Below, one piece after another: positions 5,827-46,138 of a stretch of DNA of 64,000 bases. Below the pieces are notes generated by a model. That model searched no databases. It saw only the letters and a list, made by a program, of their open reading frames with translations, and was not told where the DNA came from. The translations under genes were made by a program, and so were the position numbers. Position 1 is the first letter of the stretch; every line of letters begins with the position of its first letter. The stretch lies in IMG/VR virus record IMGVR_UViG_3300032240_001991, positions 186,001 through 250,000 of that record; one strand, written 5' to 3'.

Positions 5827-5864
5827 TTTCCTTGTATAAGTAATAAAAACTTTTTGAGGAAATT

Positions 5865-7154: not shown

Positions 7155-7161
7155 AATTTGA

Positions 7162-7244: not shown

Positions 7245-7250
7245 AGTTAT

Positions 7251-7324: not shown

Positions 7325-7333
7325 GATTTAAAT

Positions 7334-7409
7334 GGCCTCGTAGCTCAGTGGATAGAGCAGTAGCCTTCTAAGCTATTGGTCGCAGGTTCAAATCCTGCCG
7401 AGGTCGCCA
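7334..7409 (+). tRNA. tRNA-Arg(UCU)
   Basis: Loop CT-TCT-AA, CCA. Confidence 0.95.
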
Positions 7410-7423
7410 GTTATAAAAGTTTT

Positions 7424-7479
7424 AGGATGCCTACAGCAAATAAAAAATCAAACTTTGAAATTTGAAAAATGCGCATCCT
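7424..7479 (+). ncRNA. Second AGGATGC-CTACAGCAA cassette, enclosing a Gln(UUG)-anticodon-like hairpin
   Basis: Same 21-nt 5' flank (GTTTTAGGATGCCTACAGCAA) and ATCCTGTTTTATTTT 3' flank as the 5626 copy; outer stem AGGATGC/GCATCCT; inner TCAAA-CTTTGAAA-TTTGA. Confidence 0.7.
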
Positions 7480-7489
7480 GTTTTATTTT

Positions 7490-7563
7490 GCCGGATTGGT
7501 ATAATGGTATTACAGCGGTCTCCAAAACCGTTAACGGGGGTTCAATTCCCTCATCCGGTGCCA
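7490..7563 (+). tRNA. tRNA-Trp(CCA)
   Basis: Loop CT-CCA-AA, G73-CCA. Confidence 0.93.
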
Positions 7564-7583
7564 GACTTAAAAATAAATAATTT

Positions 7584-8288
7584 GTGAATAACATAATTTC
7601 AGAAGGACTAGAATATAACACCAATATTGGATTAAATTATTCTTTCTTATACATGGAAGTTCCTAAGGTATGTTGCACAGTAATTAAAAGAACCCTTCAA
7701 AAAATAGAAGGTTGCGAAAAAGATATAAGCGAAATCCCAATAAAAAGTATGACGACATTAAAAGGAATAAGCAATTCTGGAATGTCTTTTCATGATATAT
7801 TTCATTCTAAAAAATTATTTAAATTTACATTTATCAGGAATCCTTATACACGAATTTTATCTTGCTACCTTGATAAAATTCAATCAAAAAACATTGTGCC
7901 TGATTCGCAACAATATCACGAATATTACGATGCTTTAAATTTAGATTTTAATAAAGAAATTTCTTTTAAAGAATTTTTACTAGCTCTTAAAAAAGACGAA
8001 AATTTAACTAAAAATACGCATTGGACTCCGCAGTTTCTTTTAATTAAAGATTCTAGAATTTCCTATGATTTTATAGGTAGATTTGAAAATTTTGAAAATG
8101 ATTTTAAATTTGTATTAGAACAGATTGGAAAGCCAGACGCAATTATAGCAAATCATTTTCCTGAAAAAATTAGGACTAATGCTAACTTCAGGATAAAAGA
8201 ATTCTACGGAGAGACAGAAAAAGCCTTAGTTTCTGAACTTTACGAATGTGATTTTCGTAGATACAATTATTCAATAGACAGTATTTAA
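7584..8288 (+). CDS. Carbohydrate sulfotransferase (family 2)
   Basis: PAPS-binding-like VPKVCCT, FTFIRNPYTRILSCY, HWTPQ, YDFIGRFENFEND motifs. Confidence 0.85.
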   Translation: MNNIISEGLEYNTNIGLNYSFLYMEVPKVCCTVIKRTLQKIEGCEKDISEIPIKSMTTLKGISNSGMSFHDIFHSKKLFKFTFIRNPYTRILSCYLDKIQSKNIVPDSQQYHEYYDALNLDFNKEISFKEFLLALKKDENLTKNTHWTPQFLLIKDSRISYDFIGRFENFENDFKFVLEQIGKPDAIIANHFPEKIRTNANFRIKEFYGETEKALVSELYECDFRRYNYSIDSI

Positions 8289-8295
8289 AAAGTAC

Positions 8296-8324
8296 TTGAC
8301 TTTTGCATGGTAAAAGAATATAAT
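8296..8324 (+). promoter_or_regulatory. Sigma70-type promoter
   Basis: TTGACT-N17-TATAAT upstream of tRNA-Gln. Confidence 0.75.
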
Positions 8325-8335
8325 AAGTTAACAAT

Positions 8336-8409
8336 TGAGGGTTCGTCTAAAGGTAGGACCGCGGTCTTTGAAGCCGCTTATCGTGGTTCGAATCCACGAC
8401 CCTCAACCA
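8336..8409 (+). tRNA. tRNA-Gln(UUG)
   Basis: U1-A72, loop CT-TTG-AA, CCA. Confidence 0.92.
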
Positions 8410-8432
8410 AATTATTAAATAAATATGTTCAC

Positions 8433-8506
8433 GGGGATGTAAGCTAACGGGAAACTGGCGCGTTTGCATCGCGCACTTGAGGGTTCGATTCCCTCCATCT
8501 CCACCA
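8433..8506 (+). tRNA. tRNA-Ala(UGC)
   Basis: G3:U70 pair, loop TT-TGC-AT, CCA. Confidence 0.93.
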
Positions 8507-8515
8507 ATCAATTGT

Positions 8516-8589
8516 TGCGCGGTAGTAGAACGGCACTACGCTGGGCTCATAATCCGGAGAACTTGGTTCAACTCCAAGCTGCGCTACCA
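8516..8589 (+). tRNA. tRNA-Met(CAU), probably initiator
   Basis: Unpaired U1/U72, GGG run in the anticodon stem, loop CT-CAT-AA. Confidence 0.85.
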
Positions 8590-8597
8590 TTTTAATA

Positions 8598-9512
8598 ATG
8601 AAAATACTTTATACTAGACATATAGATACTAATCAAGAAAAACGAATGCAACAGGACTATCTTTGTGATGTTGTTATTCACGGCTTACGGAGTTTAGGAG
8701 AAGAAGTTATAGATGTACCAAGACTTTGGTACATGTATAAAAATGAGTTTGGTTCTGGAAAGAATAACCTAAACGATCTCTATGGAAGGGGGTTTACTAT
8801 TTTTGCAACCCTAGACGAAGATTTAATAGATCGCACAGATATAGAATTAAAAATTCGTAATCGATATTTTGATCTTATTGTTATTGCTAGAATAGATTAC
8901 GGAACACCTTATCTATCTTTAATTTTAGAAAATTATCCGCCATCAAAAATTATAATACTTGATGGACAGGATTCTGAAAAAATTTACTCTACGTATCTAA
9001 CAACTTGCGGAACTTACTTCAAAAGAGAATTAAGGTTTTCTGATCCGCATATTTTTCCAATTTCTTTTGCTTTTCCTAAAGAAAAAATTCAACAGGTAAA
9101 TTATAATAAATCTAAAATAATTTCTCAAATTAAACCAAACTATAATAGATCTTATCTATTTGATAACGAAAAAGATTATTATAATGAGTATAACGAATCT
9201 CTATTTGCTTATACACAATGTAAAGTAGGTTGGGACGTCATGAGACATTACGAAATCATGGCTTGTAGATCTATTCCTATATTTTATGGTATAGATGTCT
9301 GTCCAGAATATACTTGTACTACATTGCCAAAAAAAGAGTTGTTAGAAATTTTAAATAAACACCTTCAAGATGGGTTTGATTGGTTTACCCAAAATCTAAG
9401 TTACTGTTACGAAATGGAAGAAAAGATACATCAACATTTCTTAAAACATTGCACTACAGAAGTATTAGCAAAATATATCTTAGATACTCATTTTAGTAGA
9501 GTTAAATTATGA
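8598..9512 (+). CDS. Putative glycosyltransferase-like protein (paralog 1)
   Basis: GWDVMRHYEIMACRSIPIF C-terminal motif resembles CgeB/exostosin-like GT folds; strongly similar to the next ORF. Confidence 0.5.
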   Translation: MKILYTRHIDTNQEKRMQQDYLCDVVIHGLRSLGEEVIDVPRLWYMYKNEFGSGKNNLNDLYGRGFTIFATLDEDLIDRTDIELKIRNRYFDLIVIARIDYGTPYLSLILENYPPSKIIILDGQDSEKIYSTYLTTCGTYFKRELRFSDPHIFPISFAFPKEKIQQVNYNKSKIISQIKPNYNRSYLFDNEKDYYNEYNESLFAYTQCKVGWDVMRHYEIMACRSIPIFYGIDVCPEYTCTTLPKKELLEILNKHLQDGFDWFTQNLSYCYEMEEKIHQHFLKHCTTEVLAKYILDTHFSRVKL

Positions 9513-10408
9513 AGATTTTAATTACACGAAACTGGGTTGATCGATACCAAGATTACCTTTCAGATTCAATATTTCATGGGCTTAAAAGTCTAGGTGAAGA
9601 AGTTGTAGATGTACCGCAACTATGGTACATGTATAAAGATGAGTTTACTTCTGGAAAGCGTAGTTTAGTTAACGACGTATATGGCAGAGGATTTACTTTG
9701 TATTCCTCAATAGATTCTGACAATGTTGATCGAACAGACATAGAACATAAAATACGATCTAGCTACTTTGATATCATCATCTGTTCAAGAGCTGAGTTGC
9801 CAGGACCTTATTATTATCAAATGCTAGAGTCATATCCGCACAATAAAATTATAGTTTTAGATGGTACTGATGAAACTCATCTTTGTGATCAAAATCTTTT
9901 AGGGAAAGCAACATATTTTAAAAGAGAAAATGTTCATCCTTATAATAGATCTGTACATCCTATTTCTTTTTCTTTCCCAAAAGAAAAAATTCAAAAACCT
10001 AATTTTAATAAATCAAAAATGATGGCTGCTCCTGATCCTAGAGCAGCTTCTTCTTTTTCTTTTTTTAAAGAAGAAGATTATTACAATGAATATAATAAAT
10101 CTTGCTTTGGAGTAACAATAAAAAAAGGCGGATGGGACTGTATGCGACATTACGAAATTATGGGTTCGAGAGCCATACCTTTATTTTTAGATATAGATCA
10201 TTGCCCTAATAGTATTCTAACTACGTTACCTAAAAAAGAATTATTTGACATTTTAACTGTATGCCGAGAGAAAGGCGGCGATTGGATTAAAGAAAACATG
10301 GATTATTATTATGAAATGGAAGAAAAGATACATCAACATTTCTTAAAACACTGTACTACAGAAGAATCGGCAAAATATATGTTAGATATTCATCTTAAAA
10401 ATCGTTGA
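9509..10408 (+). CDS. Putative glycosyltransferase-like protein (paralog 2)
   Basis: GGWDCMRHYEIMGSRAIPLF; shares YEMEEKIHQHFLKHCTTE with paralog 1. Confidence 0.5.
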   Translation: MKILITRNWVDRYQDYLSDSIFHGLKSLGEEVVDVPQLWYMYKDEFTSGKRSLVNDVYGRGFTLYSSIDSDNVDRTDIEHKIRSSYFDIIICSRAELPGPYYYQMLESYPHNKIIVLDGTDETHLCDQNLLGKATYFKRENVHPYNRSVHPISFSFPKEKIQKPNFNKSKMMAAPDPRAASSFSFFKEEDYYNEYNKSCFGVTIKKGGWDCMRHYEIMGSRAIPLFLDIDHCPNSILTTLPKKELFDILTVCREKGGDWIKENMDYYYEMEEKIHQHFLKHCTTEESAKYMLDIHLKNR

Positions 10409-10432
10409 CATTTTTTTATATGAATATATAAT
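10405..10432 (+). promoter_or_regulatory. Sigma70-type promoter
   Basis: TTGACA-N16-TATAAT upstream of tRNA-Ser. Confidence 0.65.
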
Positions 10433-10450
10433 TGTTAAATAAATTGTTAA

Positions 10451-10539
10451 GGAAGGTTGGCTGAGCGGTTAAAGCAGCAGGTTGCTAACCTGCCGTCCCT
10501 AATAGGGGCGCATAGGTTCGAATCCTATACCTTCCGCCA
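10451..10539 (+). tRNA. tRNA-Ser(GCU)
   Basis: Loop TT-GCT-AA, long V arm, G73-CCA. Confidence 0.94.
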
Positions 10540-10559
10540 TATTTTTTAAAGGAAACTTT

Positions 10560-10745
10560 GTGTACAAACCAACAGCAAGTTATAAAATGTCTTCAGAATC
10601 TAAGCGTCTTCTTTCAAAGATTCAGGACCCGCATGAGAGGGGAGAAACGAAGCGTTTGATTATTCAAGCGGATATGCATTATCAATCTCGTTCTCGAGTT
10701 CGTAGCGGACGAGAAATTAAGTCTGGTGAGACCGACACAGAGTAA
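10560..10745 (+). CDS. Small basic hypothetical protein
   Basis: GTG start after AAGGAA; fills the gap between two tRNAs. Confidence 0.55.
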   Translation: MYKPTASYKMSSESKRLLSKIQDPHERGETKRLIIQADMHYQSRSRVRSGREIKSGETDTE

Positions 10746-10757
10746 ATAAAGATATAT

Positions 10758-10833
10758 GCCCACTTAGCACAGCTGGTAGTGCAACTGATTTGTAATCAGT
10801 AGGTCGGGAGTTCGAATCTCTCAGTGGGCACCA
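10758..10833 (+). tRNA. tRNA-Thr(UGU)
   Basis: Loop TT-TGT-AA, CCA. Confidence 0.95.
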
Positions 10834-10836
10834 ATC

Positions 10837-10963
10837 GCGACGGCTCCAATGTCGTTAATATTGGCGCATTCTTGGATGCGAGAAAAGTCCTTAGAATTTA
10901 AGATTACTTTGTCCTAATTGCCATAGTCAAACAGAAAATTTTGGCAGTAAAGGTCAAGGTAAT
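10837..10963 (+). ncRNA. Candidate structured RNA (H-type pseudoknot plus two hairpins)
   Basis: GCGAC/GTCGT and CCAAT/ATTGG interleaved; CGCAT/ATGCG hairpin; long hairpin ATTACTTTG/CAAGGTAAT with inner CCT/AGG and TTGCCA/TGGCAG. Confidence 0.45.
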
Positions 10964-11011
10964 AGATATAAAAAATTTACAAAGAGAAATAGTTATTTGC
11001 AAAAATACAAA

Positions 11012-11085
11012 GCCTCGTTAGTTTAATGGTAAAACTCTGCTTTTACACGGCAGCTACGGCAGTTCAATTCTGTCACGAGGTACCA
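11012..11085 (+). tRNA. tRNA-Val(UAC)
   Basis: Loop TT-TAC-AC, A73-CCA. Confidence 0.9.
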
Positions 11086-11090
11086 AGATT

Positions 11091-11167
11091 CGGGAAGTAG
11101 CTCAGCTTGGTAGAGCACCTGCTTTGGGAGCAGGGTGTCGCAGGTTCGAATCCTGTCTTCCCGACCA
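11091..11167 (+). tRNA. tRNA-Pro(UGG)
   Basis: C1-G72, loop TT-TGG-GA, CCA. Confidence 0.95.
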
Positions 11168-11183
11168 ATTATAAGGAAACAAT

Positions 11184-11876
11184 ATGTCGTTAGAAAGATT
11201 ACCCGGAGTAAGTTATGTGTGGCACGAAAGAGACATCTTTACTGTAGTTTACAATAATGGACAATGGGGTAACGGAGTTACCCTGCCTAAAAGCGGAATT
11301 GGATCTACCCTTTGGTATACTGAAAATCTCCGTAAAGAATTACCAAATTTATTAGAAAAATATAATTTAAAAAGAATATACGATGCACCATGTGGTGATA
11401 TGACATGGATGCCCCTAGTATTAGAATCTACTCATTATGAGCAATACATAGGAGCAGATATTGTATCAACACTTATCCAAGATATGAGAGATAAGTTTGA
11501 CAACGATAAATGGTCATTTAGAGTTAATAATATCTGCAATGATCGTTTTCCGGACGCAGATGTTTGGTTTTGTAGAGATTGTTTGTTTCACTTAACTAAC
11601 GAGAATATTCTTAAGGCCCTCAAAAATTTTGTTAATTCTTCTATTCCTTACATACTAACAACTTCACATTGTTTTGATACCGTTGGACCAGATAACGTAG
11701 TATTTCAGGAAAATCAAGACGGATTAAACGGCGATTACAGATTGTTAAATCTAACAGCTAGCCCGTGGAATTTTTCAGAACCGTTAGCTAAAATAGACGA
11801 TACGTATGAAGGGTTTTCTAAAAGATACATGGGTCTTTGGACAAGAGAAAGTGTTGCTAAAGCTCTAAATCTATAA
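11184..11876 (+). CDS. Class I SAM-dependent methyltransferase
   Basis: IYDAPCGD motif I, YIGADIV, DVWFCRDCLFHL. Confidence 0.8.
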   Translation: MSLERLPGVSYVWHERDIFTVVYNNGQWGNGVTLPKSGIGSTLWYTENLRKELPNLLEKYNLKRIYDAPCGDMTWMPLVLESTHYEQYIGADIVSTLIQDMRDKFDNDKWSFRVNNICNDRFPDADVWFCRDCLFHLTNENILKALKNFVNSSIPYILTTSHCFDTVGPDNVVFQENQDGLNGDYRLLNLTASPWNFSEPLAKIDDTYEGFSKRYMGLWTRESVAKALNL

Positions 11877-11922
11877 TAAATACTTTAGTGTTAAGTTAAC
11901 ACAAATAAAAAGGAGATTTACA

Positions 11923-12129
11923 ATGGAAACTCTAAAAGGTGCGGTAAAGTCAAAAACAGTTTGGTTAGGTGTATTAGTAGCTGCTCTTTCAGCTCTTCAG
12001 TCTGGACTAAATGGAGTAGGTATTACTCCTGAACAACTAGGTGTTGTTGGCCCGCTTCTAGGTGTTGTAATTGTTTGGTTACGTTCTATAACAACTGGGT
12101 CTTTAGCTGATAAGAACACATCTAAATAA
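11923..12129 (+). CDS. Small two-TM membrane protein (holin-like)
   Basis: KSKTVW start, two hydrophobic helices, basic tail; strong AAGGAG RBS. Confidence 0.5.
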   Translation: METLKGAVKSKTVWLGVLVAALSALQSGLNGVGITPEQLGVVGPLLGVVIVWLRSITTGSLADKNTSK

Positions 12130-12147
12130 TTTGAGTTTACTGCTATT

Positions 12148-12183
12148 AAAGGGTTAGATCGCAAGGTCTAACCCTTTATTTGT
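12148..12183 (+). terminator. Rho-independent terminator
   Basis: AAAGGGTTAGATC-GCAA-GGTCTAACCCTTT followed by T-rich sequence. Confidence 0.8.
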
Positions 12184-12188
12184 TTATT

Positions 12189-12264
12189 GCCCCTGTAACT
12201 TAACGGATAGAGTGCTTGGCTTCGAACCAAGAAGTTGTGGGTTCAAATCCTGCCAGGGGCGCCA
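12189..12264 (+). tRNA. tRNA-Arg(UCG)
   Basis: Loop CT-TCG-AA, CCA. Confidence 0.88.
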
Positions 12265-12274
12265 TAAATACAAG

Positions 12275-12733
12275 ATGCGTATTACAGAAATACTAGAAGG
12301 TAAATTTGATTATTCAGTAAAGGATTATGAAAACGTACCTTTTGATCCTACAGATTCGTCTGGTCGACTAAGTGTGGGAATTAGTTCAAAAAATCCTAAC
12401 TTAGGACCTCACGAAGGCAAGATACTAAACTTAATGCTTAAAGGTATGAAGCCTGCTGCTGTTATTACACAAAAAGAATTAAATCAATATTTTGCTCCTT
12501 ACATACATGCAAAGAAAATTGTTCTAATTGGTCCTTTTCCTATTACTAGAGGAACACAAACAGACTTTATTGTAACTCTGCCTGGAGAGGAATGGAGAGG
12601 CCGCAAATTATCAAAGATTTGGCCAAAATTACACGCTGCTACTGATCCTAAAGAAATTAAATTGATACATGCTAAAATTGGAAAACTCTTAGGCTATCCA
12701 AAAGAATCAATCAGACATTTCATTGATAAATAA
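12275..12733 (+). CDS. Hypothetical protein (MRITEILE N-terminus, possible internal head protein)
   Basis: ORF-track start lies inside tRNA-Arg; ATG 12275 is the likely start. Confidence 0.6.
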   Translation: MRITEILEGKFDYSVKDYENVPFDPTDSSGRLSVGISSKNPNLGPHEGKILNLMLKGMKPAAVITQKELNQYFAPYIHAKKIVLIGPFPITRGTQTDFIVTLPGEEWRGRKLSKIWPKLHAATDPKEIKLIHAKIGKLLGYPKESIRHFIDK

Positions 12734-12855
12734 TCTCGCCATCCAACCTTTCGGTATAGGACAAGTAGTATGACTACGGCGTATGCAGGGATCTAGAGAC
12801 AGTGCGCACTGTTCTACGATTGACGAACCGAACCAACACTTTTAAGGAGACCTAA

Positions 12856-13215
12856 ATGGCTGTTTACTGGGGATATCATTTGATGCTGGATTGCTCGGGT
12901 TGCAACGATAATATAAAAGATCGTGAGCAAATTTATCGTTTTACCAAAGAATTAGTTAAGCGCATCGACATGACTGCTTTTGGCGAACCAATTATTGAAT
13001 TTTTGCTTCCTGGTGATCCAAAAGAAGGTTACAGCTTAATGCAGCTCATTACCACCAGTAATATTTGTGCACATTTTGTTAACCCTGACAATACTGCCTA
13101 CATCGATATTTTTAGTTGCAAAGATTATAATATAGAAGAAGCCAAGGCTGTAGTCTCTGAATTTTTTGCTCCAACTAAAATGAGAACTAATTACATTACC
13201 CGCAATGCTGATTAA
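12856..13215 (+). CDS. speD: S-adenosylmethionine decarboxylase proenzyme-like (pyruvoyl type)
   Basis: GYHLMLDCSGC, GYSLMQLITTSNICAHF (cleavage-site region), YIDIFSCK. Confidence 0.8.
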   Translation: MAVYWGYHLMLDCSGCNDNIKDREQIYRFTKELVKRIDMTAFGEPIIEFLLPGDPKEGYSLMQLITTSNICAHFVNPDNTAYIDIFSCKDYNIEEAKAVVSEFFAPTKMRTNYITRNAD

Positions 13216-13221
13216 CGTATA

Positions 13222-13299
13222 GCTCCTATCGTCTAGACGGGCCCAGGACTTTCGATTCTCAGTCGGATAACACAGGTTCGAATCCTGTTAGGAGCACCA
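13222..13299 (+). tRNA. tRNA-Glu(CUC)
   Basis: GCTCCTA/TAGGAGC acceptor, loop TT-CTC-AG, CCA. Confidence 0.8.
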
Positions 13300-13306
13300 A
13301 AGATAA

Positions 13307-13936
13307 ATGGAAAACAAGTATATACTGTTTGATATAGGAGCAAATACTGGAACCGATAGCTTGGAAAAAACTAAGCTTAATCCTTATGTTGAAACATATG
13401 CTTTTGAACCAACTCCTTATCTAACCCAATACCTAGCATGGCACAGTAAAGAATTCTCTAATAGATACCATATCATTCCGCACGCTGTTAGTAACTTTGA
13501 CGGAATTTCTAAGTTTAATATTGGAATTGACTGGGGTTGCAGTTCTTTAAATGAAATTAGTGATAACATCAACGAAATATGGCCTGGGTGGCCCGGTGGG
13601 CCAGAATTTCGTACAATAGAAATCATTGACGTTGGAGTAATTAGATTAGATACCTGGTTTAGAAGAAATAATTTAAACATTGATAAAATTGATTTCTTTC
13701 ATTGCGACACGCAAGGCAGTGATTTAAAAGTCCTTCAAGGAATGGGAGATTATATAGAGCTTATTCAAGAAGGAGTAGTAGAGTGTGCTAGAGACGAAAA
13801 TTCTAAATTATATAAAGAAAACCATACTGAACAAGAAATGATTGAATTTTTGTTTTCAAAAGGGTTTGACATTCCTAGAAGAGAATGGAATGACCAATAT
13901 GGTTGCGAAATTAATGTATTCTTTAAAAAACGATAA
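13307..13936 (+). CDS. FkbM-family methyltransferase
   Basis: FDIGANTG, YAFEPTP, IRLD, HCDTQGSDLKVLQG. Confidence 0.88.
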   Translation: MENKYILFDIGANTGTDSLEKTKLNPYVETYAFEPTPYLTQYLAWHSKEFSNRYHIIPHAVSNFDGISKFNIGIDWGCSSLNEISDNINEIWPGWPGGPEFRTIEIIDVGVIRLDTWFRRNNLNIDKIDFFHCDTQGSDLKVLQGMGDYIELIQEGVVECARDENSKLYKENHTEQEMIEFLFSKGFDIPRREWNDQYGCEINVFFKKR

Positions 13937-13940
13937 TTTC

Positions 13941-13969
13941 TTGACATAATAGCAAGTATGATATATACT
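13941..13969 (+). promoter_or_regulatory. Sigma70-type promoter
   Basis: TTGACA-N17-TATACT. Confidence 0.75.
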
Positions 13970-13991
13970 ATATACATTCTAAGGAGTTTAA

Positions 13992-14210
13992 ATGAGTAAG
14001 GGAAGTCGAGCAAGGCCACTATCAGTTTCTCAGGCAGAATTTGATAAGAACTGGGAAGAAATTTTTGGAGGAATGGGTTCTTGCCCTTGCGGCCGTAGCC
14101 CAATTAAACAGTGTGTAGGGTGGCACAATCTTAACGAAGAACAACTGGCTAGAGCAAAAGAAAACTGGGATAAAAGAGAAAAGTTACGTAATGACAAGAG
14201 TTGTAGTTAA
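13992..14210 (+). CDS. Small protein with CDGSH-like Fe-S/Zn motif
   Basis: CPCGRSPIKQCVGWH has the spacing of the CDGSH 3Cys-1His site. Confidence 0.55.
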   Translation: MSKGSRARPLSVSQAEFDKNWEEIFGGMGSCPCGRSPIKQCVGWHNLNEEQLARAKENWDKREKLRNDKSCS

Positions 14211-14592
14211 CGGTTGCTTTGACGTATTACACCTAGGACACCTTAATCTTTTAGCATATGCTAGAGGAATTACTAATTCTTACGTGATGGTACTTATAGA
14301 TAGTGATCGGAGAGTTAAAGAACTTAAAGGATCATCTCGTCCTATTAATCCTCAAGGAGAACGTGCTTTGATGTTATCTGCTCTCAGATATGTTGATCAA
14401 GTTCGTATATTTGATAGTGACGAAGAATTAGCAGATATGATCAAACAATTTGCTCCAGATATAATGGTCAAAGGCAGTGACTATAAAAATAAACCTATCA
14501 TAGGTTCAGAATACTGCAAGGAAATAAAATTTTATGAGTACCTCAATGGATATTCAACAACAGAAAAAATACAGAGTATTATTAATAGGTGA
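14191..14592 (+). CDS. rfaE2: Heptose-phosphate adenylyltransferase (HldE/RfaE domain II) cytidylyltransferase family
   Basis: NGCFDVLHLGH (HxGH), DRRVKELKGSSRPI, VKGSDY, GYSTT. Confidence 0.88.
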   Translation: MTRVVVNGCFDVLHLGHLNLLAYARGITNSYVMVLIDSDRRVKELKGSSRPINPQGERALMLSALRYVDQVRIFDSDEELADMIKQFAPDIMVKGSDYKNKPIIGSEYCKEIKFYEYLNGYSTTEKIQSIINR

Positions 14593-15340
14593 TAGCTGTA
14601 TTGATGTTTATCGATACGGTACTGTAGATAGAATCAGTCCTGAGGCTCCTGTTCCTGTTTTTAAATTTAAAAATATGGAAACAAGACAAGGAATGGCAGC
14701 AAATGTTCAAAAAAATTTAGAAGCATTTGGAATTGACGTCACTTCTTACTTTGGCACAGATTCTACTAAAACCAGAATAGTAGATCTCAAAAGTAAACAA
14801 CATATTCTAAGAATTGACGACGATGTCTCTTCTGACCCTTTAATCTTTGGAGATATAAAAGACCGATTAAAGACCTTTGATGCAATAGTGATCAGCGACT
14901 ACGATAAAGGTTGGGTAAGTTATGAATTGGTTGAAAATATTAGTAGAACTTACCAAGGTCCAATTTTTATCGATACAAAGAAAAGAGATTTATCTAGATT
15001 CGGCCAATGCTACGTTAAGGTTAACGAATTAGAATATAACAACAGATATTCTGTAAACGAAACTCTAATTATTACTTTAGGGGAGCGTGGGGCTGTTTAT
15101 CGAACTTATAATCAAGATGATGGTAAAAAAGAAAAATGGTTCCCTACGGAAAAAGTAGAAGTAGTAGATGTTTGCGGCGCAGGGGATACATTTTTGTCCG
15201 CTATGGTTGCAAATTACTTAAATAGTAGTAATATAGAAGATGCAATCATTTTTGCTAATCGTGCTAGCGGAATTGCAGTACAACATAGCGGAGTGTATGT
15301 ATTAACTGAGGAAGACATTAAAAATATTGAGCGGGTATGA
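14534..15340 (+). CDS. rfaE1: Heptose-phosphate kinase (HldE/RfaE domain I), PfkB family
   Basis: IGDSCID.Y.YG.V.RISPEAPVPV, ISDYDKG, DVCGAGDTF, AN.A.GIAV. Confidence 0.88.
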   Translation: MSTSMDIQQQKKYRVLLIGDSCIDVYRYGTVDRISPEAPVPVFKFKNMETRQGMAANVQKNLEAFGIDVTSYFGTDSTKTRIVDLKSKQHILRIDDDVSSDPLIFGDIKDRLKTFDAIVISDYDKGWVSYELVENISRTYQGPIFIDTKKRDLSRFGQCYVKVNELEYNNRYSVNETLIITLGERGAVYRTYNQDDGKKEKWFPTEKVEVVDVCGAGDTFLSAMVANYLNSSNIEDAIIFANRASGIAVQHSGVYVLTEEDIKNIERV

Positions 15341-15404
15341 TGTAGTGGTAGCCTGCAACCTTGCCAAGGTCGACGTACGAGTTCGATTCTCGTTACCCGC
15401 TCCA
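15331..15404 (+). tRNA. tRNA-Gly(GCC), overlapping the last 10 nt of rfaE1
   Basis: GCGGGTA/TACCCGC acceptor, loop TT-GCC-AA, U73-CCA. Confidence 0.88.
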
Positions 15405-23313: not shown

Positions 23314-23913
23314 ATGTATAATACTTTGGTGCCGATGGTTGTAGAAAAAACTGGTCAGGGCGAACGTGCTTTTGATATCTTTTCTAGGCTTTTAAATGAG
23401 CGAATTGTATTTCTAAATGGTCCAGTTGACGACTATAGTGCAAATCTTGTTGTAGCGCAGATTTTACATTTAGAAAGCGTAGATAGCGAAAAGGATATTA
23501 ATTTTTACATTAATAGTCCTGGAGGCGTAATTACTTCTGGTATGGCAATTTATGATGTTATGCAGTTTGTTAAGCCAGATGTAGCTACTTTTGTTATGGG
23601 TCAGGCATGTAGTATGGGTAGTTTTTTAGCTCAGGCAGGAACGCCAGGAAAACGATTTATGCTTCCCAATGCACGACACATGATTCATCAGCCAAGTGGC
23701 GGGGCGCAGGGTATGGCTTCTGATATTGAAATTTCATACAAGGAGATTATGTATCTAAAGAAGCGTCTAACTGAGCTCTACGTTAAGCACAATAGCGCCG
23801 GTAAAACATATGAAGAATTTGAGGAAGATATGGATCGTGATACATTTATGAGTGCTGAAGAGGCTCTAGGATACGGTCTAGTTGATCAAATTTTAGAAAA
23901 GCGCAGCCAGTAA
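23314..23913 (+). CDS. clpP: ATP-dependent Clp protease proteolytic subunit
   Basis: [25 protein letters not shown] (Ser nucleophile), MIHQP, DMDRD.FMSAEEA..YGLVD. Confidence 0.96.
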
Positions 23914-25053: not shown

Positions 25054-25344
25054 ATGGCAAAAAAATATCTTAATAAAGACCAACTTAAATCATTTAAATT
25101 TCAATCACAAATATGGATATCTCTAGCAGTAGTAATGCTAGTAGTATTAAGTTTAGAAATTAATAAACACGGATTAAACAGTCCTCTTATTTTCTGGTAT
25201 TCTATTACAATTGGAACCAGTTGGTGGAGTTGGACAATGTATGTAATTAACGCATTGATAAACCAACGCATTGCCGAAACGGAATTACTAGACGATCTAA
25301 AAAATGATGTCAAGTTAATAAGAACTGATATTATAGACAAATAA
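25054..25344 (+). CDS. Small membrane protein
   Basis: Two hydrophobic segments. Confidence 0.6.
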   Translation: MAKKYLNKDQLKSFKFQSQIWISLAVVMLVVLSLEINKHGLNSPLIFWYSITIGTSWWSWTMYVINALINQRIAETELLDDLKNDVKLIRTDIIDK

Positions 25345-25370
25345 ATACTGTCCTTAAGTAATTCGGTCTT

Positions 25371-25430
25371 GGCGTCATCCCGGTTGATAAATTCTGCCGC
25401 CTATGCTATTATATACCATAGGAGGTTAAA
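25371..25430 (+). promoter_or_regulatory. Candidate riboswitch-like leader of queD
   Basis: GGCGTCA/TGCCGCC helix overlaps an alternative CCTATG/CATAGG hairpin that covers the AGGAGG RBS. Confidence 0.5.
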
Positions 25431-25961
25431 ATGTATACTAGTACTAAGTTTTTTAAAGAAATTGGACCTTGCGCTTATCGCAATTGGAAGTCAGATACAG
25501 ACTGTTATATGCTTCACGGCTACGATCGTAGCTTTCGATTTGTATTTGGAGCATCTCACCTAGATAAGCAAGGGTTTGTTGTAGATTTTGGTGGCCTAAA
25601 AGCCATCAAGCGTCAACTGGAAGATTGGTTTGATCACACAGTAATCTTACAGGCTGACGATCCTTTGGTTCATACATTCAGACATTTAACCAAGTTAGGC
25701 CACTGCAAACTTCAGACGTTTCCGTTGATTAGTTGCGAAGGGTTGTCTGAGTATGTAGGAGAATACGTAGATCACATGCTTTACGAAGCCAATGGGGGTC
25801 GTAATTGGGTCATTAGCTGTGAAATGATTGAAGCTGAAAAGAATAGTGCTATCTACACTATACAGCATGACAATCCAGATCGCATGCGTTGGCACGATCT
25901 ACAGGCTTTCAACAAAGAGATGGAAGAAGAAGCTGGTAAGATTGAATTTAAGGATCTATGA
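25431..25961 (+). CDS. queD: 6-carboxy-tetrahydropterin synthase (QueD/PTPS family)
   Basis: CAYR..C..LHGYD (QueD-type CxxxHG), [25 protein letters not shown]. Confidence 0.85.
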
Positions 25962-26893
25962 TGAAGAAAATTTTAGTTACCGGCGGTGCTGGATTTCTAG
26001 GTAGTCATTTGTGTGATAAATTAGTAACACAAGGCCATCATGTGCTTTGTGTTGATAATTATTTTACAGGTAGTAAAAAAAACATTGAACCATTACTTCG
26101 TTATCCTAATTTTGAAGTAATTCGTCAGGATGTCTGTTTTCCCCTCTATGTTGAAGTAGATGAAATTTACAATCTCGCTTGTCCTGCAAGTCCTGTTCAC
26201 TATCAGCACGACCCTATTCAAACTACTAAAACCAGTATCTTAGGTGCATATAATCTATTAGGTTTGGCTAAACGCACTGGCGCTAAAATCTTACAAGCAT
26301 CTACTAGCGAAGTGTACGGTGATCCGTTGGAACATCCGCAGCGCGAAGAATACTGGGGAAATGTAAACCCAATTGGAATTCGTAGTTGTTACGACGAAGG
26401 TAAAAGAGCAGCAGAAACTTTGTTCTTTGATTATCACCGTCAGCATAAAGTTCGTATCAAAGTTGCGCGTATTTTTAATACTTATGGTCCTCGTATGGCA
26501 GCAAACGACGGGCGAGTAGTTAGCAACTTTATTGTGCAGGCACTTAAAGATAAAGATATTACTATATACGGAGATGGAACACAAACACGAAGTTTTTGTT
26601 ATGTTGACGATCTAGTATATGGGTTAATGTCGTTAATGAATAGCAAAGATTCTATTACTGGGCCAATTAATTTAGGAAACCCAGGTGAGTTTACTATTTT
26701 AGAATTAGCAGAAAAAGTTATTGAAAAAACTGGATCTTCTAGCAAAATTGTATTCAAACCTCTTCCGGGAGATGATCCAAAACAGCGGCAACCGGATATC
26801 ACAAGGGCGCAGGTATTATTGGATTGGAATCCAGAGATTATTTTAGATAATGGACTTGCAGACACTATTAATTATTTTAAAAATGTTGTATAA
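25958..26893 (+). CDS. UDP-glucuronate decarboxylase (UDP-xylose synthase), SDR family
   Basis: [53 protein letters not shown]. Confidence 0.95.
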
Positions 26894-26901
26894 TTTACCA
26901 C

Positions 26902-27939
26902 ATGACACAACACATTAAACGTATTGGATTTGCTTGTAAGTGGATTGATCGTCCAGATCAATGCGATGGTATTTCTGCTAAGGATGATGCCAAACAATAT
27001 AATACCGCTGGTACCACTGTAGCATGGCTCAATCGACAAAGTCGAGATGTTGCAGAGCAAAAGCTTTGGGACATTATGGTTTACAACATTAATGCAACTA
27101 AACGGCTAGTAGAAAGGGTAGGATCGCTAGATAATCATCTACGTATGGTAAGGTTGTCTAGTGATTTACTGCCAGTGTATACTGAATCAAATTGGTGCTA
27201 CTACTGGCGTAAACCGGATGTGATACAATACTGCGAACAAGGATTTGCAGAGATTGGTAATATTGCTAGGCAATTAGGTGTTCGTCTTAGTTTCCATCCA
27301 GGCCAGTTTACTGTACTAGCTAGCGACAATCCTGATATTGTTAATCGGTCAATAGAAGAATTTGAGTATCATGCAGATATGGTGCGGTGGATGGGTTATG
27401 GTCAACAATTTCAAGACTTTAAGATTAATGTGCATATCGCTGGTCGACTAGGCGCACAAGGTATTCGTGATGTGTACCCTCGGCTAAGTACTGAGGCTCG
27501 TAACACCATCACTATTGAGAACGAGGAGATGGCGCATGGGTTGGATGATTGTCTTGAGTTGGCGGATTTGGTTCCTATCGTGCTTGATATTCATCATCAC
27601 TGGATTCGTGAAGGGGAATACATACGAGCCACTGATCCGCGTGTGGGAATGGTGGTGGACAGCTGGCGTATGGTTAGGCCTGTTATCCATTATAGTGTGT
27701 CTCGTGAGGACATTCTTCTAGATCATTGTAGCGAAACATTGCCTGATCATGCAAGTCTATTAGAATCCGGTCATAAAAAACAAAAGCTCCGTGCCCATAG
27801 TGACTTCTATTGGAATAGATCTGTCAACAAATGGGCATTAAGCTTTTTAGATCAATTTGATCTAATGTGCGAAGCAAAGGGCAAGAATCTTGCTAGCTTT
27901 GCTTTGCACACACAGGCAAAAGAATTAAACCTGCTTTGA
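26902..27939 (+). CDS. uvsE: UV-damage endonuclease (UVDE)
   Basis: RIGFACK, MVRLSSDLLP, RLSFHPGQF..LAS, IENEE, VLDIHHH, RAHSD, MCEAKGK. Confidence 0.93.
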   Translation: MTQHIKRIGFACKWIDRPDQCDGISAKDDAKQYNTAGTTVAWLNRQSRDVAEQKLWDIMVYNINATKRLVERVGSLDNHLRMVRLSSDLLPVYTESNWCYYWRKPDVIQYCEQGFAEIGNIARQLGVRLSFHPGQFTVLASDNPDIVNRSIEEFEYHADMVRWMGYGQQFQDFKINVHIAGRLGAQGIRDVYPRLSTEARNTITIENEEMAHGLDDCLELADLVPIVLDIHHHWIREGEYIRATDPRVGMVVDSWRMVRPVIHYSVSREDILLDHCSETLPDHASLLESGHKKQKLRAHSDFYWNRSVNKWALSFLDQFDLMCEAKGKNLASFALHTQAKELNLL

Positions 27940-43864: not shown

Positions 43865-46138
43865 ATGTTAGAACCAGATAAAGAATTGTCAAGCATGTTT
43901 GAACATGCAATACATACAGCAATTGAATATAATCACGAATACATTACATTGGAACATTTTCTTTACGGAATGATTTCTAACGATTCGTTTAGCGAAATGC
44001 TTACACAGTACGGTGCAGACGTACCAGGATTAAAAAATAATTTAGAAAATTATATCGATACTAATTTAGCGTCAATTGCAACTTTGCAAAAAAACGAAAG
44101 GCCACAAAAAACAAATACTGTAGAAAGAATGCTTAACAGAGCATTTACACAGGTACTATTCAGTGGGCGTCAGCAAATCTCTCCTATAGATTGTTTGATT
44201 AGTTTTTTCTCAGAAAAGAACAGTCATGCAAACTTTTTTATGAGAAAGGCTAAGATTGAAAAAGAAACATTTTTGGAATTTGCTATGAATAATAGTTCTT
44301 CGTCTGAAGAAAAAGAACAGTCTACAGTAAACGAAAAACAGATCGAAAAGTTTTTAATTCAGTACTGTGCTAATCTAACAGAAAAAGCCAAAAACAAAAA
44401 AATTGACCCGGTAATTGGTCGAGAAAAAGAAATTGAGGATTTAATATTGATCCTTGCTCGTCGTAATAAGAGCAATGTTATGCTTATTGGCGACCCGGGT
44501 GTAGGCAAAACAGCTATTGCTGAAGGAGTTGCTCGTAAAATTGTTGAAGGCGACGTTCCTACTTTTATACAGAATCATAGTGTATATTCACTGGATATCA
44601 GTGCAATGTTGGCGGGTAGTAAGTACCGCGGTGATTTTGAAGAGCGTTTGAAAAATGTTCTTACCGCATTAGAAAAGAAAAAGAATTGCATTCTTTTTAT
44701 TGATGAAGCTCACATGATGAGCGGTGCTGGAGCGGTCAATGGCAATAGTAACGATATGAGTAATATGCTCAAACCTGCACTTGCTAAAGGTAGCATTAAA
44801 GTTATAGCTAGCACAACCTGGGAAGATTTCCGCAAGAACTTTGAAAAAGATCGTGCACTTATGCGGCGATTCCAGCGAGTTATGGTCAACGAACCAAATG
44901 AAGAAACTGCTATTAAGATCGTTAAGGGTGTAAAAAAGTATTACGAAAAGCATCACAAGGTAAAGATTACTAATCAAGCAGTGATTGACAGCGTAAAATA
45001 CAGTATTAAGTATATTTCAGATAAAAAATTACCTGATAAGGCATTGGATCTTATTGATTGTGCTAGTGCAAGATTTAAATTGCGTGACGAAGACGGGGGC
45101 GTTGTTGACCACGACGAAATTGTTTTTGAAGTTGCAAAGATTACAGGGTTGCCACTAGATCAAATTGCTGCCAAAGAAAGCAATAATCTTAAGGATCTTG
45201 AAAAAAACATGCGGGCAAAAGTGTATGGTCAAGATAAAGCCATCGAAGCATTGCTTGATAAGATCTTTATTGCACAGGCGGGGCTAAAATCAGTCAATCG
45301 TCCAATTGGTAATTTCTTGTTTGTTGGCCCAACTGGTGTTGGAAAAACTGAAGCGGCGAAACAACTTGCAGCCAACATGGGAGTAAAGTTGATTCGATTT
45401 GATATGAGTGAATATCAAGAACAACATTCAGTAGCTAAATTTATTGGTAGCCCCCCAGGATATGTTGGGTTTGATGATAATGCAGGACAGTTGATTACAC
45501 GTCTACAGGAAAATCCAAACGGAATCTTACTGTTTGATGAAGTTGAAAAGGCACACCCTAGTGTGTTAACTATTCTACTTCAGTTAATGGATAATGGATT
45601 TGTTACTGGTAGTAATGGAAAAACTGCAGACGGTCGTAATGCTATCATTATCATGACTAGTAACTTAGGTGCAGCAGATTCTGAAAAGAATTCAGTTGGA
45701 TTTGGTAGTTTAGAACGAGATAGTGATCCTAAGGATGCTGTTAACAAGTTCTTTGCACCAGAATTTCGTAATCGTTTAGACGGAACTATTAAGTTTGATC
45801 GACTAGATCATAGTACTATGGCATTAATTGTTAAGAAATTTATCGACGATCTTAACGGTTTGGTCAAAGATCGAAATGTACATGTTCGGTTAAGTACCGA
45901 AGCTGTTGAACATTTGATCAAAAAAGGATTTGATCGAAAGATGGGAGCTCGTCCGCTACAGCGTACAATTGATGAACACATAAAAAAGCCGTTAAGTAAG
46001 GAAATACTATTTGGTAATCTTATTAACGGAGGTATTGTTGAAATTACCATTGTAGATGACGCGCTTACCTTTAAATTTGTAGATGTATTGCCAATTAAAG
46101 AAATAAAAGAAAATGAGCATCAAAGTTCTAGCAACTAA
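43865..46138 (+). CDS. clpA: ClpA-type double AAA+ unfoldase
   Basis: HEYITLEH, DPVIGRE.E, GDPGVGKTAIAEG, GSKYRGDFEER, LPDKALDLID, GPTGVGKTE, IGSPPGYVGFD, VGFG ClpP-docking loop, MGARP. Confidence 0.95.
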   Translation: MLEPDKELSSMFEHAIHTAIEYNHEYITLEHFLYGMISNDSFSEMLTQYGADVPGLKNNLENYIDTNLASIATLQKNERPQKTNTVERMLNRAFTQVLFSGRQQISPIDCLISFFSEKNSHANFFMRKAKIEKETFLEFAMNNSSSSEEKEQSTVNEKQIEKFLIQYCANLTEKAKNKKIDPVIGREKEIEDLILILARRNKSNVMLIGDPGVGKTAIAEGVARKIVEGDVPTFIQNHSVYSLDISAMLAGSKYRGDFEERLKNVLTALEKKKNCILFIDEAHMMSGAGAVNGNSNDMSNMLKPALAKGSIKVIASTTWEDFRKNFEKDRALMRRFQRVMVNEPNEETAIKIVKGVKKYYEKHHKVKITNQAVIDSVKYSIKYISDKKLPDKALDLIDCASARFKLRDEDGGVVDHDEIVFEVAKITGLPLDQIAAKESNNLKDLEKNMRAKVYGQDKAIEALLDKIFIAQAGLKSVNRPIGNFLFVGPTGVGKTEAAKQLAANMGVKLIRFDMSEYQEQHSVAKFIGSPPGYVGFDDNAGQLITRLQENPNGILLFDEVEKAHPSVLTILLQLMDNGFVTGSNGKTADGRNAIIIMTSNLGAADSEKNSVGFGSLERDSDPKDAVNKFFAPEFRNRLDGTIKFDRLDHSTMALIVKKFIDDLNGLVKDRNVHVRLSTEAVEHLIKKGFDRKMGARPLQRTIDEHIKKPLSKEILFGNLINGGIVEITIVDDALTFKFVDVLPIKEIKENEHQSSSN

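What the first reader, a model, noticed from the sequence alone, without database searches (positions are those of the whole stretch)
25345..25433. Riboswitch-like switch in front of queD
Seen: helix A GGCGTCA(25371-77)/TGCCGCC(25395-401) (6 of 7 pairs) and helix B CCTATG(25400-05)/CATAGG(25417-22) compete for the CC at 25400-01; helix B buries half of the AGGAGG RBS (25420-25). That is the logic of a translational expression platform. Established: preQ1 and THF-type riboswitches control queuosine and folate genes in bacteria; this leader does not look like preQ1-I. Inference: a new aptamer on a phage sensing a pterin/deazaguanine intermediate or GTP, tuning supply of the DNA-modifying base.
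Basis: partly seen in the sequence, partly recalled or inferred. Interest (0 to 1): 0.65.

Follow-up and report, generated by a model that had tools for sequence, protein, structure and literature searches.

The report
Phage pseudoknot switch before QueD-like gene
The 86-base leader in front of this jumbo phage's QueD-like gene belongs to a widespread RNA pseudoknot that I could not find in Rfam or the searchable literature, that always precedes this gene family in uncultured phages, and that is built like a riboswitch turning translation on, although its ligand is unknown.

Summary
On its own the leader looks unremarkable: its fold is no better than shuffles, Rfam has no match, and it resembles a sigma-70 promoter. 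Comparison with other phages changes that.

The same roughly 45-nt core precedes QueD-like T-fold genes in hundreds of uncultured phage contigs. It was found in 69 of 75 protein-anchored loci, and in 142 of 142 loci found through the core the operon contains the T-fold gene.

Across 144 distinct copies:
It joins the P1 loop to 25395-401, so it is an H-type pseudoknot. All six of its pairs covary.
- 0 of 500 shuffles reach the observed values.
- The unpaired nucleotides U25375, C25379 and the A-rich loop 3 are invariant.

The pseudoknot's 3' strand can instead pair with the ribosome-binding site (helix B, as here) or, in a second variant, with the start codon. This implies an ON switch.

In this variant the helix B loop also holds a conserved extended -10 element (TG-n-TAnnnT in 116 of 120 copies), probably an internal promoter.

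Ligand binding is untested.

The parts
25340..25347 (+). AATAAATA, a T4-late-type promoter-like motif overlapping the stop codon of the upstream 96-aa ORF. The expected transcript start, about 25354, would put the pseudoknot at the 5' end of the mRNA.
   Evidence: In the 326-kb genome, 32 of 34 AATAAATA copies are non-coding and 30 lie within 120 nt upstream of a same-strand gene. TAAATA or TAAGTA lies within 30 nt upstream of P1 in 117 of 144 relatives, most often 5-8 nt before it. Promoter activity is inferred, not shown.
25362..25366 (+). P1 5' strand (UUCGG here; consensus AGCGG).
   Evidence: Pairs with 25380-84. 99.9% of cells are paired in 144 sequences and 3 of 5 pairs covary (GC 127, CG 12, UA 3, UG 2; CG 135, AU 6, UA 3). 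RNAalifold predicts this stem independently. The window's copy is weak: 4 pairs, one of them U.G.
25367..25370 (+). L1 (UCUU). Its length varies among relatives; C25368 is nearly invariant.
   Evidence: Alignment A2.
25371..25377 (+). U25375 is an invariant unpaired base.
25378..25379 (+). L2 (UC). C25379 is invariant and sits immediately 5' of the P1 3' strand.
   Evidence: Invariant column in A2.
25380..25384 (+). P1 3' strand (CCGGU; consensus CCGCU).
25385..25394 (+). L3, A-rich (UGAUAAAUUC). A25387, A25389, A25391, U25393 and C25394 are invariant. On the DNA, 25384-89 (TTGATA) is the -35-like hexamer.
25395..25401 (+). Its last two C also begin helix B.
   Evidence: All 6 pairs covary. 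Pair 25374-25398 shows AU 56, GC 31, UA 23, CG 8, GU 7. 17 of 37 distinct haplotypes are fully paired, against a mean of 5 when the halves are re-paired at random.
25400..25422 (+). Helix B hairpin: CCUAUG/CAUAGG plus an inner UAU/AUA (25407-09/25413-15). It sequesters AGG of the ribosome-binding site.
   Evidence: The arms are conserved in 109 of 120 variant-I relatives, with 8 wobble-compatible changes and 3 mismatches. Different but still complementary arms occur in L003 (CCTGATG/CATCAGG) and L024 (TCTATGC/GCATAGG).
25404..25412 (+). TG-c-TATTAT, an extended -10-like element in the helix B loop, 17 bp after TTGATA. The predicted transcript start, about 25418-20, gives an mRNA lacking both the pseudoknot and the 5' arm of helix B.
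   Evidence: It is the best promoter-like site within 3 kb. TAnnnT at 17-18 bp with TG is kept in 116 of 120 variant-I relatives. Activity is not shown.
25420..25425 (+). Shine-Dalgarno sequence AGGAGG.
25431..25961 (+). QueD-like T-fold protein (176 aa, P0001), the regulated gene.
   Evidence: Pfam PTPS 1.2e-12. PHROG 2389 'QueD-like' 2.4e-32. Best PDB match is 6-carboxytetrahydropterin synthase 7V0F. The NCBIfam QueD equivalog scores 32.7 bits, below its cut-off of 89.
25958..26893 (+). NAD-dependent sugar epimerase/dehydratase (SDR). It overlaps the QueD-like stop codon by 4 nt and is probably co-translated.

Best explanation
The leader encodes a cis-regulatory RNA. It has a compact H-type pseudoknot aptamer: P1, then helix A joining the P1 loop to the segment after an A-rich loop 3. 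This is followed by an expression platform in which the pseudoknot's 3' strand has a second possible partner in the translation initiation region. With the pseudoknot unformed, C25400-01 complete helix B and AGG of the ribosome-binding site is buried. With the pseudoknot formed, presumably stabilised by a bound ligand, helix B loses its two C-G pairs, collapses and frees the ribosome-binding site. Translation of the QueD-like gene is then ON. Shown by comparison: the two pairings, the invariant unpaired core, the exclusive link to QueD-like genes, and the same competition logic in two unrelated platforms. Inferred: that the trigger is a small molecule, most plausibly one with a guanine-like face from the GTP to pterin to 7-deazaguanine route; that long transcripts start at the upstream late-type promoter; and that the -10-like element in the helix B loop is a second promoter producing unregulated mRNA.
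For: Distribution. The 17-18-nt core occurs exactly in more than 200 IMG/VR contigs. 135 of 142 distinct downstream proteins are P0001 homologues at 29-100% identity. In the other 7, a small ORF is inserted before a T-fold gene. In a protein-anchored sample, 69 of 75 loci carry the motif.

Structure. In an unfitted MAFFT alignment of 144 distinct cores, 94.1% of cells are paired, against 81.4% in shuffles and 31-56% when partners are slid. 9 of 11 pairs change on both sides, and 0 of 500 shuffles reach any of the five measures. RNAalifold finds P1. 17 of 37 helix A haplotypes are fully paired, against a mean of 5.0 and maximum of 11 on random re-pairing. Unpaired nucleotides are invariant.

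Platform logic. In variant II, which has no helix B and no -10, the end of the pseudoknot 3' strand forms 7-9 contiguous pairs with the start-codon region in 15 of 17 distinct leaders, with compensating changes such as TGCCATC/GATGGCA, TGTCATC/GATGACA and TGCCATTG/CAATGGCA. Duplex energy is -7.2 against -5.1 for shuffles.

Window energies. P1 plus full helix B is -8.0 kcal/mol. The pseudoknot helix is -5.1 to -6.1, and helix B without the two C-G pairs is -0.3.

Transcript context. Promoter-like motifs lie just 5' of P1 in 124 of 144 copies.
Against: There is no ligand-binding data and no transcript data; no RNA run holds this phage. The window's own P1 is weak: 4 pairs, one U.G, -1.5 kcal/mol. 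The single-sequence fold is not better than shuffles. The same bases read as a good sigma-70 promoter, and transcripts from it would bypass the switch. Close relatives at 82-83% protein identity (L003-5, L024/25) have lost the aptamer but keep the hairpin and the -10, so the gene can do without it. G.U pairs do not outnumber A.C pairs in the strict helix A register (26 against 36). Most of the A.C cases could instead be read as one-base bulges. The sequences are related, so shuffle statistics overstate independence. ON logic would be unusual for end-product control of a biosynthetic gene.
Confidence: 0.65

Rival explanations
1. The region is only a promoter: a sigma-70-type extended -10 promoter (TTGATA, 17 bp, TG-c-TATTAT), with the inverted repeats acting as DNA operators for a repressor. 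No RNA structure is involved.
For: It is the best promoter-like site within 3 kb, matching 10 of 12 positions plus TG. TAnnnT with TG and 17-18 bp spacing is kept in 116 of 120 variant-I relatives, with variation only at the inner -10 positions. The phage uses TTGAC-17-TATAAT promoters elsewhere. L024/25 keep the promoter and hairpin without the upstream part.
Against: P1 and helix A are interleaved (a-b-a'-b'), which double-stranded DNA cannot form. Both covary with many pair types, and L1 varies in length. Invariant bases such as U25375 and C25379 lie upstream of the -35. The 24 variant-II leaders keep the core but have no -10 at the right spacing. I therefore treat the promoter as an additional overlapping feature, not as the explanation of the conserved core.
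Confidence: 0.08
2. It is a structured leader that switches, but the trigger is a protein or another trans-factor rather than a metabolite. Candidates are the T-fold protein regulating itself or a phage translational repressor in the manner of T4 RegA or gp32 operators.
For: The structural evidence is the same as for the best explanation. The exclusive link to one protein family is what autoregulation predicts. T4-like phages, to which this one belongs, are known to use protein-RNA translational operators (established knowledge).
Against: The compact pseudoknot, with an invariant unpaired core and an A-rich loop 3 next to a conserved C, is typical of small-molecule aptamers. The proteins diverge to about 30% identity while the RNA core stays nearly fixed, which fits a fixed small ligand better than a co-evolving protein surface. 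This rival was not tested directly.
Confidence: 0.17
3. It is a constitutive structure with no sensing. The pseudoknot stabilises the 5' end of the late mRNA. Helix B merely silences read-through transcripts, and the internal promoter makes the translatable mRNA, as with the T4 gene e, soc and I-TevI hairpins.
For: The predicted start of the internal promoter (about 25418-20) lies inside the 3' arm of helix B, so its mRNA lacks the sequestering arm. Relatives without the aptamer keep the hairpin and the -10. The pseudoknot sits at the predicted 5' end of the upstream transcript.
Against: A 5' stabiliser does not need invariant unpaired nucleotides, and it does not need a 3' strand that is always complementary to the initiation region. 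Variant II shows the same competition without any internal promoter. The motif is restricted to a single gene family.
Confidence: 0.1

Closest known systems
preQ1-I riboswitch (Rfam RF00522)
   Same: Both are small H-type pseudoknots with a 5-bp P1. In both, a conserved C lies immediately 5' of the P1 3' strand (here the invariant C25379; from memory, the ligand-pairing C in preQ1-I). An A-rich loop 3 of about 10 nt is followed by the second helix. Both are associated with queuosine/7-deazaguanine pathway genes and act on translation. One relative (L319) even has the P1 AGAGG/CCUCU that I recall from the Bacillus subtilis queC aptamer.
   Different: No Rfam match appears even when only 81-106 nt are searched at E up to 10. 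The second helix has 6 pairs around an invariant U.C instead of 3-4 pairs. L1 is 4-9 nt and L2 is 2-3 nt, the reverse of preQ1-I. The ribosome-binding site is not part of the pseudoknot. The 3' strand instead acts as an anti-sequestor, so the logic is ON rather than OFF. The motif is known only from uncultured phages.
T4 RBS-sequestering hairpins with an internal promoter (gene e, soc, 49, I-TevI)
   Same: This phage is T4-like. A hairpin buries the ribosome-binding site in long transcripts, and a promoter element inside the hairpin should give transcripts that lack the 5' arm and are translatable.
   Different: In T4 the internal promoter is a late promoter. Here it is sigma-70-like, and the late-type motif lies upstream. 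Here the hairpin's 5' arm is also shared with a covarying pseudoknot.
PeSL cassettes of T4-type phages (stem-loop plus early promoter; Arbiol et al. 2010, cited from memory)
   Same: A conserved intergenic cassette with a stem-loop followed by a sigma-70-type promoter, located in a plastic genome region with variable neighbouring genes.
   Different: There is one copy per genome, not a repeat family. It is tied to a single gene family. It contains a pseudoknot with covariation.
Other pseudoknot riboswitches (SAM-II/SAM-V, preQ1-II/III, NAD+-II, guanidine-III, fluoride)
   Same: Compact pseudoknot aptamers that control access to the ribosome-binding site.
   Different: None is matched by cmscan, and the gene context differs.

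Membership tests
preQ1-I riboswitch | Match to the Rfam covariance model RF00522 | tested here: not met
   No hit at E up to 10 on the window leader or on 20 diverse relatives, including searches of 81 and 106 nt.
preQ1-I riboswitch | H-type pseudoknot with a 5-bp P1, an A-rich L3, and a conserved C just 5' of the P1 3' strand | tested here: met
   C25379 and the L3 adenines are invariant.
preQ1-I riboswitch | The 3' strand of P2 includes or abuts the Shine-Dalgarno sequence, so that ligand binding turns expression OFF | tested here: not met
   The Shine-Dalgarno sequence lies 19 nt after the pseudoknot. The pseudoknot 3' strand competes with a sequestor helix, which implies ON.
preQ1-I riboswitch | Binds preQ1 | not testable with these tools
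   Needs in-line probing or ITC.
Riboswitch (general) | Conserved structured aptamer supported by covariation, with conserved unpaired nucleotides | tested here: met
Riboswitch (general) | Located in the 5' UTR of functionally related genes | tested here: met
   142 of 142 operons hold a QueD-like T-fold gene, and 69 of 75 protein-anchored loci carry the motif. That it lies in a 5' UTR is inferred from promoter-like motifs just upstream of P1.
Riboswitch (general) | Expression platform with mutually exclusive pairings | tested here: met
   Helix B shares C25400-01 with the pseudoknot. The variant-II sequestor overlaps the pseudoknot 3' strand by 3-4 nt.
Riboswitch (general) | Direct, selective binding of a small molecule that changes expression | not testable with these tools
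Sigma-70 extended -10 promoter | TTGACA-like hexamer, 17 +/- 1 bp, TG-n-TAnnnT | tested here: met
   (116 of 120 variant-I relatives).
Sigma-70 extended -10 promoter | Transcript 5' ends about 7 nt downstream of the -10 | not testable with these tools
   No RNA run holds this sequence.
PeSL-type mobile promoter cassette | Many near-identical copies within one genome, flanking variable ORFs | tested here: not met
   A single copy in the 326-kb record.
QueD (6-carboxytetrahydropterin synthase), for the downstream gene | Score above the NCBIfam equivalog cut-off; CxxxHGH zinc/catalytic motif | tested here: inconclusive
   TIGR03367 scores 32.7 bits against a cut-off of 89.25. Pfam PTPS and PHROG 2389 'QueD-like' are clear matches. 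The motif reads CxxxHGY, and the first zinc histidine of 7V0F aligns with a Cys. Homologues at 45-54% identity are annotated QueD in cultured phages that carry queC/queE/folE clusters.

The most novel reading that the evidence does not exclude
This is a new riboswitch class confined to phages. It would be a preQ1-I-like but distinct pseudoknot aptamer that senses a guanine-faced metabolite of the GTP/pterin/7-deazaguanine route, such as H2NTP, CPH4, CDG, preQ0, or guanine/GTP itself. It would switch translation of the phage QueD-like enzyme ON, and it would carry an embedded promoter that lets the phage bypass the sensor at another stage of infection.
Probability: 0.4. Interest if true: 0.88.

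Novelty: new member of a known kind. Interest (0 to 1): 0.78.

Why it matters
To my knowledge, few if any riboswitch classes are known only from viruses. This motif has hundreds of natural variants, clean covariation, two independent expression platforms with the same logic, and a single associated enzyme family. That is the profile of a strong orphan riboswitch candidate.

Identifying its ligand would show which metabolite T4-like freshwater phages monitor when they deploy QueD-like enzymes, which may serve 7-deazaguanine or pterin chemistry. It would also give a compact (about 45 nt) ON-type aptamer for engineering, and it would test whether the preQ1-I fold has been reused for a new ligand or a new logic.

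The overlap of an aptamer with a promoter is also a neat example of two codes written in one 40-bp stretch.

Tried and rejected
- **Single-sequence folding.** The fold is no better than shuffles, so it is uninformative here.
- **Rfam.** Four cmscan runs, including on the bare leader, found nothing relevant. The only hits score 10-22 bits, all well below their families' gathering scores (34-83 bits).
- **Promoter plus operator only.** This was my first reading. I rejected it as the whole story after seeing the covariation and variant II.
- **Intrinsic terminator of the upstream gene.** P1 has only 4-5 bp, a 13-nt loop and no U tract.
- **PeSL-like repeat.** There is a single copy in the genome.
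- **Pistol or other ribozymes.** No Rfam hit, and variant II lacks the second hairpin.
- **Transcript evidence.** The look-up of sequencing runs listed only DNA runs.
- **Cultured-phage example.** blastn of a consensus-like leader against 50,697 GenBank phages gave nothing. QueD homologues in Synechococcus phage BUCT-ZZ01, Pseudanabaena phage Pan1 and Achromobacter phage Motura lack the motif.
- **Bacterial genomes.** An exact-core scan gave 13 hits. Twelve are chance matches and one is a 183-kb contig in a Haliscomenobacter MAG.
- **Literature.** Four full-text searches and two papers checked gave no description of this motif. Most subscription-journal papers are not in the library.
- **Strand asymmetry (G.U against A.C).** Not informative: 26 against 36, confounded by one-base register shifts.
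- **Not done.** I did not build a covariance model or run a tree-aware test.

Full report
**The observation.** The window is bases 186001-250000 of a 326,658-bp IMG/VR virus record. The phage is T4-like, with a family B DNA polymerase, long tail fibre and baseplate wedge proteins. Nearly all long ORFs in the window lie on the + strand and it holds 20 tRNA genes. Region 25345-25430 is an 86-nt spacer between a 96-aa ORF without family matches (25054-25344) and a 176-aa ORF (25431-25961). Helix A is GGCGTCA 25371-77 with TGCCGCC 25395-401, pairing in 6 of 7 positions. Helix B is CCTATG 25400-05 with CATAGG 25417-22. AGGAGG lies at 25420-25.

The downstream protein is a T-fold protein. It matches Pfam PTPS at 1.2e-12 and PHROG 2389 'QueD-like' at 2.4e-32. 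Its best solved relative is 6-carboxytetrahydropterin synthase 7V0F. It falls below NCBIfam's QueD equivalog cut-off and reads CxxxHGY where canonical QueD has HGH. 'QueD-like' is therefore the fair label. The record encodes a GTP cyclohydrolase I. I found no QueC and no TGT/DpdA, but the record is estimated to be only about 36% complete.

**First impression: ordinary.** The fold of 25345-25445 is -16.1 kcal/mol with z = +0.99. Rfam gives nothing at E up to 10. The best sigma-70-like site within 3 kb lies exactly here: TTGATA 25384-89, then 17 bp, then TG-c-TATTAT 25404-12. This puts the -10 in the loop of helix B and the expected start at about 25418-20, inside its 3' arm. The genome also has a strongly oriented motif, [AT]ATAAATA. 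Of 34 AATAAATA copies, 32 are non-coding and 30 lie within 120 nt upstream of a same-strand gene. This resembles the T4 late promoter consensus TATAAATA (established knowledge). One copy sits at 25340-47.

**What changed the picture.** Relatives of the protein showed that the leader is conserved. Of the 142 distinct proteins encoded just downstream, 135 are homologues of P0001 at 29-100% identity, median 39%. In the other 7, a small ORF is inserted in front of a T-fold gene. In a sample anchored on the protein rather than the RNA (alignment A1; at least 592 viral loci exist, of which the best 80 were fetched), 69 of 75 loci with enough upstream DNA carry the motif. The genes after the T-fold gene vary: MazG-like, QueE-like radical SAM, SDR, aldolase, cupin, PRTase and PsiE. 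The RNA goes with the T-fold gene, not with the neighbourhood. There is one copy in this genome.

**Structure.** P1 has the consensus AGCGG/CCGCU. In the window it is 25362-66/25380-84, reading UUCGG/CCGGU, so it is weak here. The fold is therefore an H-type pseudoknot: P1, L1 (4-9 nt, variable length), helix A 5' strand, L2 (2-3 nt ending in an invariant C), P1 3' strand, L3, helix A 3' strand.

On a plain MAFFT alignment of 144 distinct cores (A2), the named structure gives these results:
- 94.1% of cells are paired, against 81.4 +/- 0.5% in shuffles and 31-56% when partners are slid by 1-3 columns.
- 9 of 11 pairs show changes on both sides.
- 165 cells are doubly changed, against 42 in shuffles.
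- There are 25 further pair types, against 19 in shuffles.
- None of 500 shuffles reaches any of these measures.
- P1 is 99.9% paired.
- All six helix A pairs covary. Pair 25374-25398 shows AU 56, GC 31, UA 23, CG 8 and GU 7. Pair 25377-25395 shows AU 135 and GC 9.

RNAalifold finds P1 unaided. Helix A occurs as 37 distinct haplotypes, and 17 are fully paired in strict register, against a mean of 5.0 and a maximum of 11 in 2000 random re-pairings. Most of the rest differ by a one-base bulge or insertion at the internal mismatch.

The invariant unpaired positions are U25375, C25379, A25387, A25389, A25391, U25393 and C25394. U25375 faces C25397 as U.C in 142 of 144 copies. C25368 is nearly invariant. 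Interleaved pairings of this kind cannot form in duplex DNA, and L1 varies in length. A DNA operator therefore does not explain the core.

**Expression platform.** The leaders fall into two groups.

Variant I has 120 members, including the window. The last two C of helix A begin helix B, which pairs with CAUAGG of the ribosome-binding site. In the window, helix B is worth -6.5 kcal/mol but only -0.3 without those two C-G pairs. Helix A is worth -5.1 to -6.1. The two states are close in energy.

Variant II has 24 members, with no helix B and no -10-like element. Instead, the last 3-4 nt of the helix A 3' strand plus the next few bases form 7-9 contiguous pairs with the start-codon region in 15 of 17 distinct leaders. 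The changes compensate: TGCCATC/GATGGCA, TGTCATC/GATGACA, TGCCATTG/CAATGGCA, TGTCATCT/AGATGACA. Across all 144, the duplex between this segment and the initiation region averages -7.2 kcal/mol, against -5.1 for shuffles.

Two unrelated platforms with the same logic are the strongest argument for a true switch. Forming the pseudoknot frees the initiation region, so expression is ON. This is inferred from sequence. No ligand and no in vivo behaviour was tested.

**Transcripts.** A late-like TAAATA or TAAGTA lies within 30 nt upstream of P1 in 117 of 144 copies, most often 5-8 nt before it. A -10-like hexamer lies 4-11 nt before P1 in 22 copies. In all, 124 of 144 have one or the other. The pseudoknot is therefore predicted to sit at the very 5' end of an mRNA. 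No RNA-seq run holds this phage.

**The overlapping promoter.** In variant I, TAnnnT is kept 17 bp (107 copies) or 18 bp (9 copies) after the L3 hexamer, always with TG at -15/-14. Variation is only at the inner positions: TATAAT 60, TAAAAT 24, TATTAT 8. Relatives that have lost the aptamer (L024/25 and L003-5, at 82-83% protein identity) keep a hairpin and a -10. I therefore think an internal promoter is real, with a probability of about 0.5-0.6. Its mRNA would start inside the 3' arm of helix B and escape the switch. This recalls the arrangement I remember from T4 genes e, soc and I-TevI.

**Comparison with known families.** The 3' half resembles preQ1-I: a conserved C next to the P1 3' strand, an A-rich L3, and a second helix following. 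The gene association also fits. However, the Rfam preQ1 model and all other models fail to match even on 81-106-nt inputs. The loop and helix lengths differ, the ribosome-binding site lies outside the pseudoknot, and the logic is ON. Four full-text searches and two checked papers did not turn up this motif. It is absent from 50,697 GenBank phage records by blastn. QueD homologues in cultured phages sit inside que/folE clusters without it. An exact-core scan of 185,579 species genomes found a single true copy, on a 183-kb contig in a Haliscomenobacter MAG. I cannot exclude a description in a paper outside the searchable library.

**Verdict.** This is a conserved RNA switch in front of a phage QueD-like gene that matches nothing in Rfam or in the literature I could search. 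The fold should be corrected to a pseudoknot, and a promoter signature overlaps it. Ligand sensing remains to be shown.

My confidence for each part:
- Real conserved RNA pseudoknot: about 0.9.
- Acts through competing pairings on translation initiation: about 0.7.
- Trigger is a small molecule: about 0.5.

Noticed in passing
whole genome G000; for example window 25340-47, 2970-77 (G000 188970) and 11875-82 (G000 197875): [AT]ATAAATA occurs 56 times in the 326-kb record, almost always 4-90 nt upstream of a same-strand start codon. This looks like a T4-type late promoter set. Several copies lie only 4-8 nt from the ATG, which would give nearly leaderless mRNAs.
   Followed up: partly
G000 about 64,000-73,000, minus strand (outside the window): There is a cluster of about 12 near-identical early-type promoters, TTGAC(t/a)-ttttggtaaaacctg-c-TATAAT, in front of short ORFs. 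The conserved spacer resembles the PeSL-like repeated promoter cassettes of T4-type phages.
   Followed up: no
window 3920-15404: Twenty tRNA genes are interspersed with ORFs. They include a 95-nt tRNA-Ile(TAT) call at 3920-4014, which is unusually long and could contain an intron or be miscalled.
   Followed up: no
window 58246-59139: The GTP cyclohydrolase I gene is 297 aa long. Its FolE domain covers residues 108-290, and the N-terminal part matches PHROG 661, of unknown function. It lies about 33 kb from the QueD-like gene and has no copy of the pseudoknot motif.
   Followed up: partly
window 23314-23913 and 43865-46138: The phage encodes both ClpP and a 757-aa Clp-type ATPase (PHROG 4871, 'ATP-dependent protease'), which together would make a complete phage-encoded Clp protease.
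   Followed up: no
window 25431-25961 (P0001) and alignment A1: Most motif-associated T-fold proteins read CxxxHGY. The first zinc histidine of the solved QueD 7V0F aligns with Cys or Phe/Tyr in them. One motif-associated member (L258) keeps the canonical HGH. The phage enzymes may differ in metal site or chemistry from canonical QueD.
   Followed up: partly
L197:3262-3531 (minus strand): One viral contig carries two copies of the motif about 220 nt apart. A variant-I copy precedes a short ORF, and a variant-II copy precedes the T-fold gene.
   Followed up: no
L352 (NZ_JBBAKG010000001.1, MAG Haliscomenobacter sp., 183-kb contig): This is the only true copy of the motif found in the bacterial and archaeal species genome set. 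The contig may be a jumbo phage binned with the MAG, or it may hint at the host.
   Followed up: no
window 26902-27939: A UvdE-type UV damage endonuclease gene follows the QueD-like and SDR gene pair.
   Followed up: no
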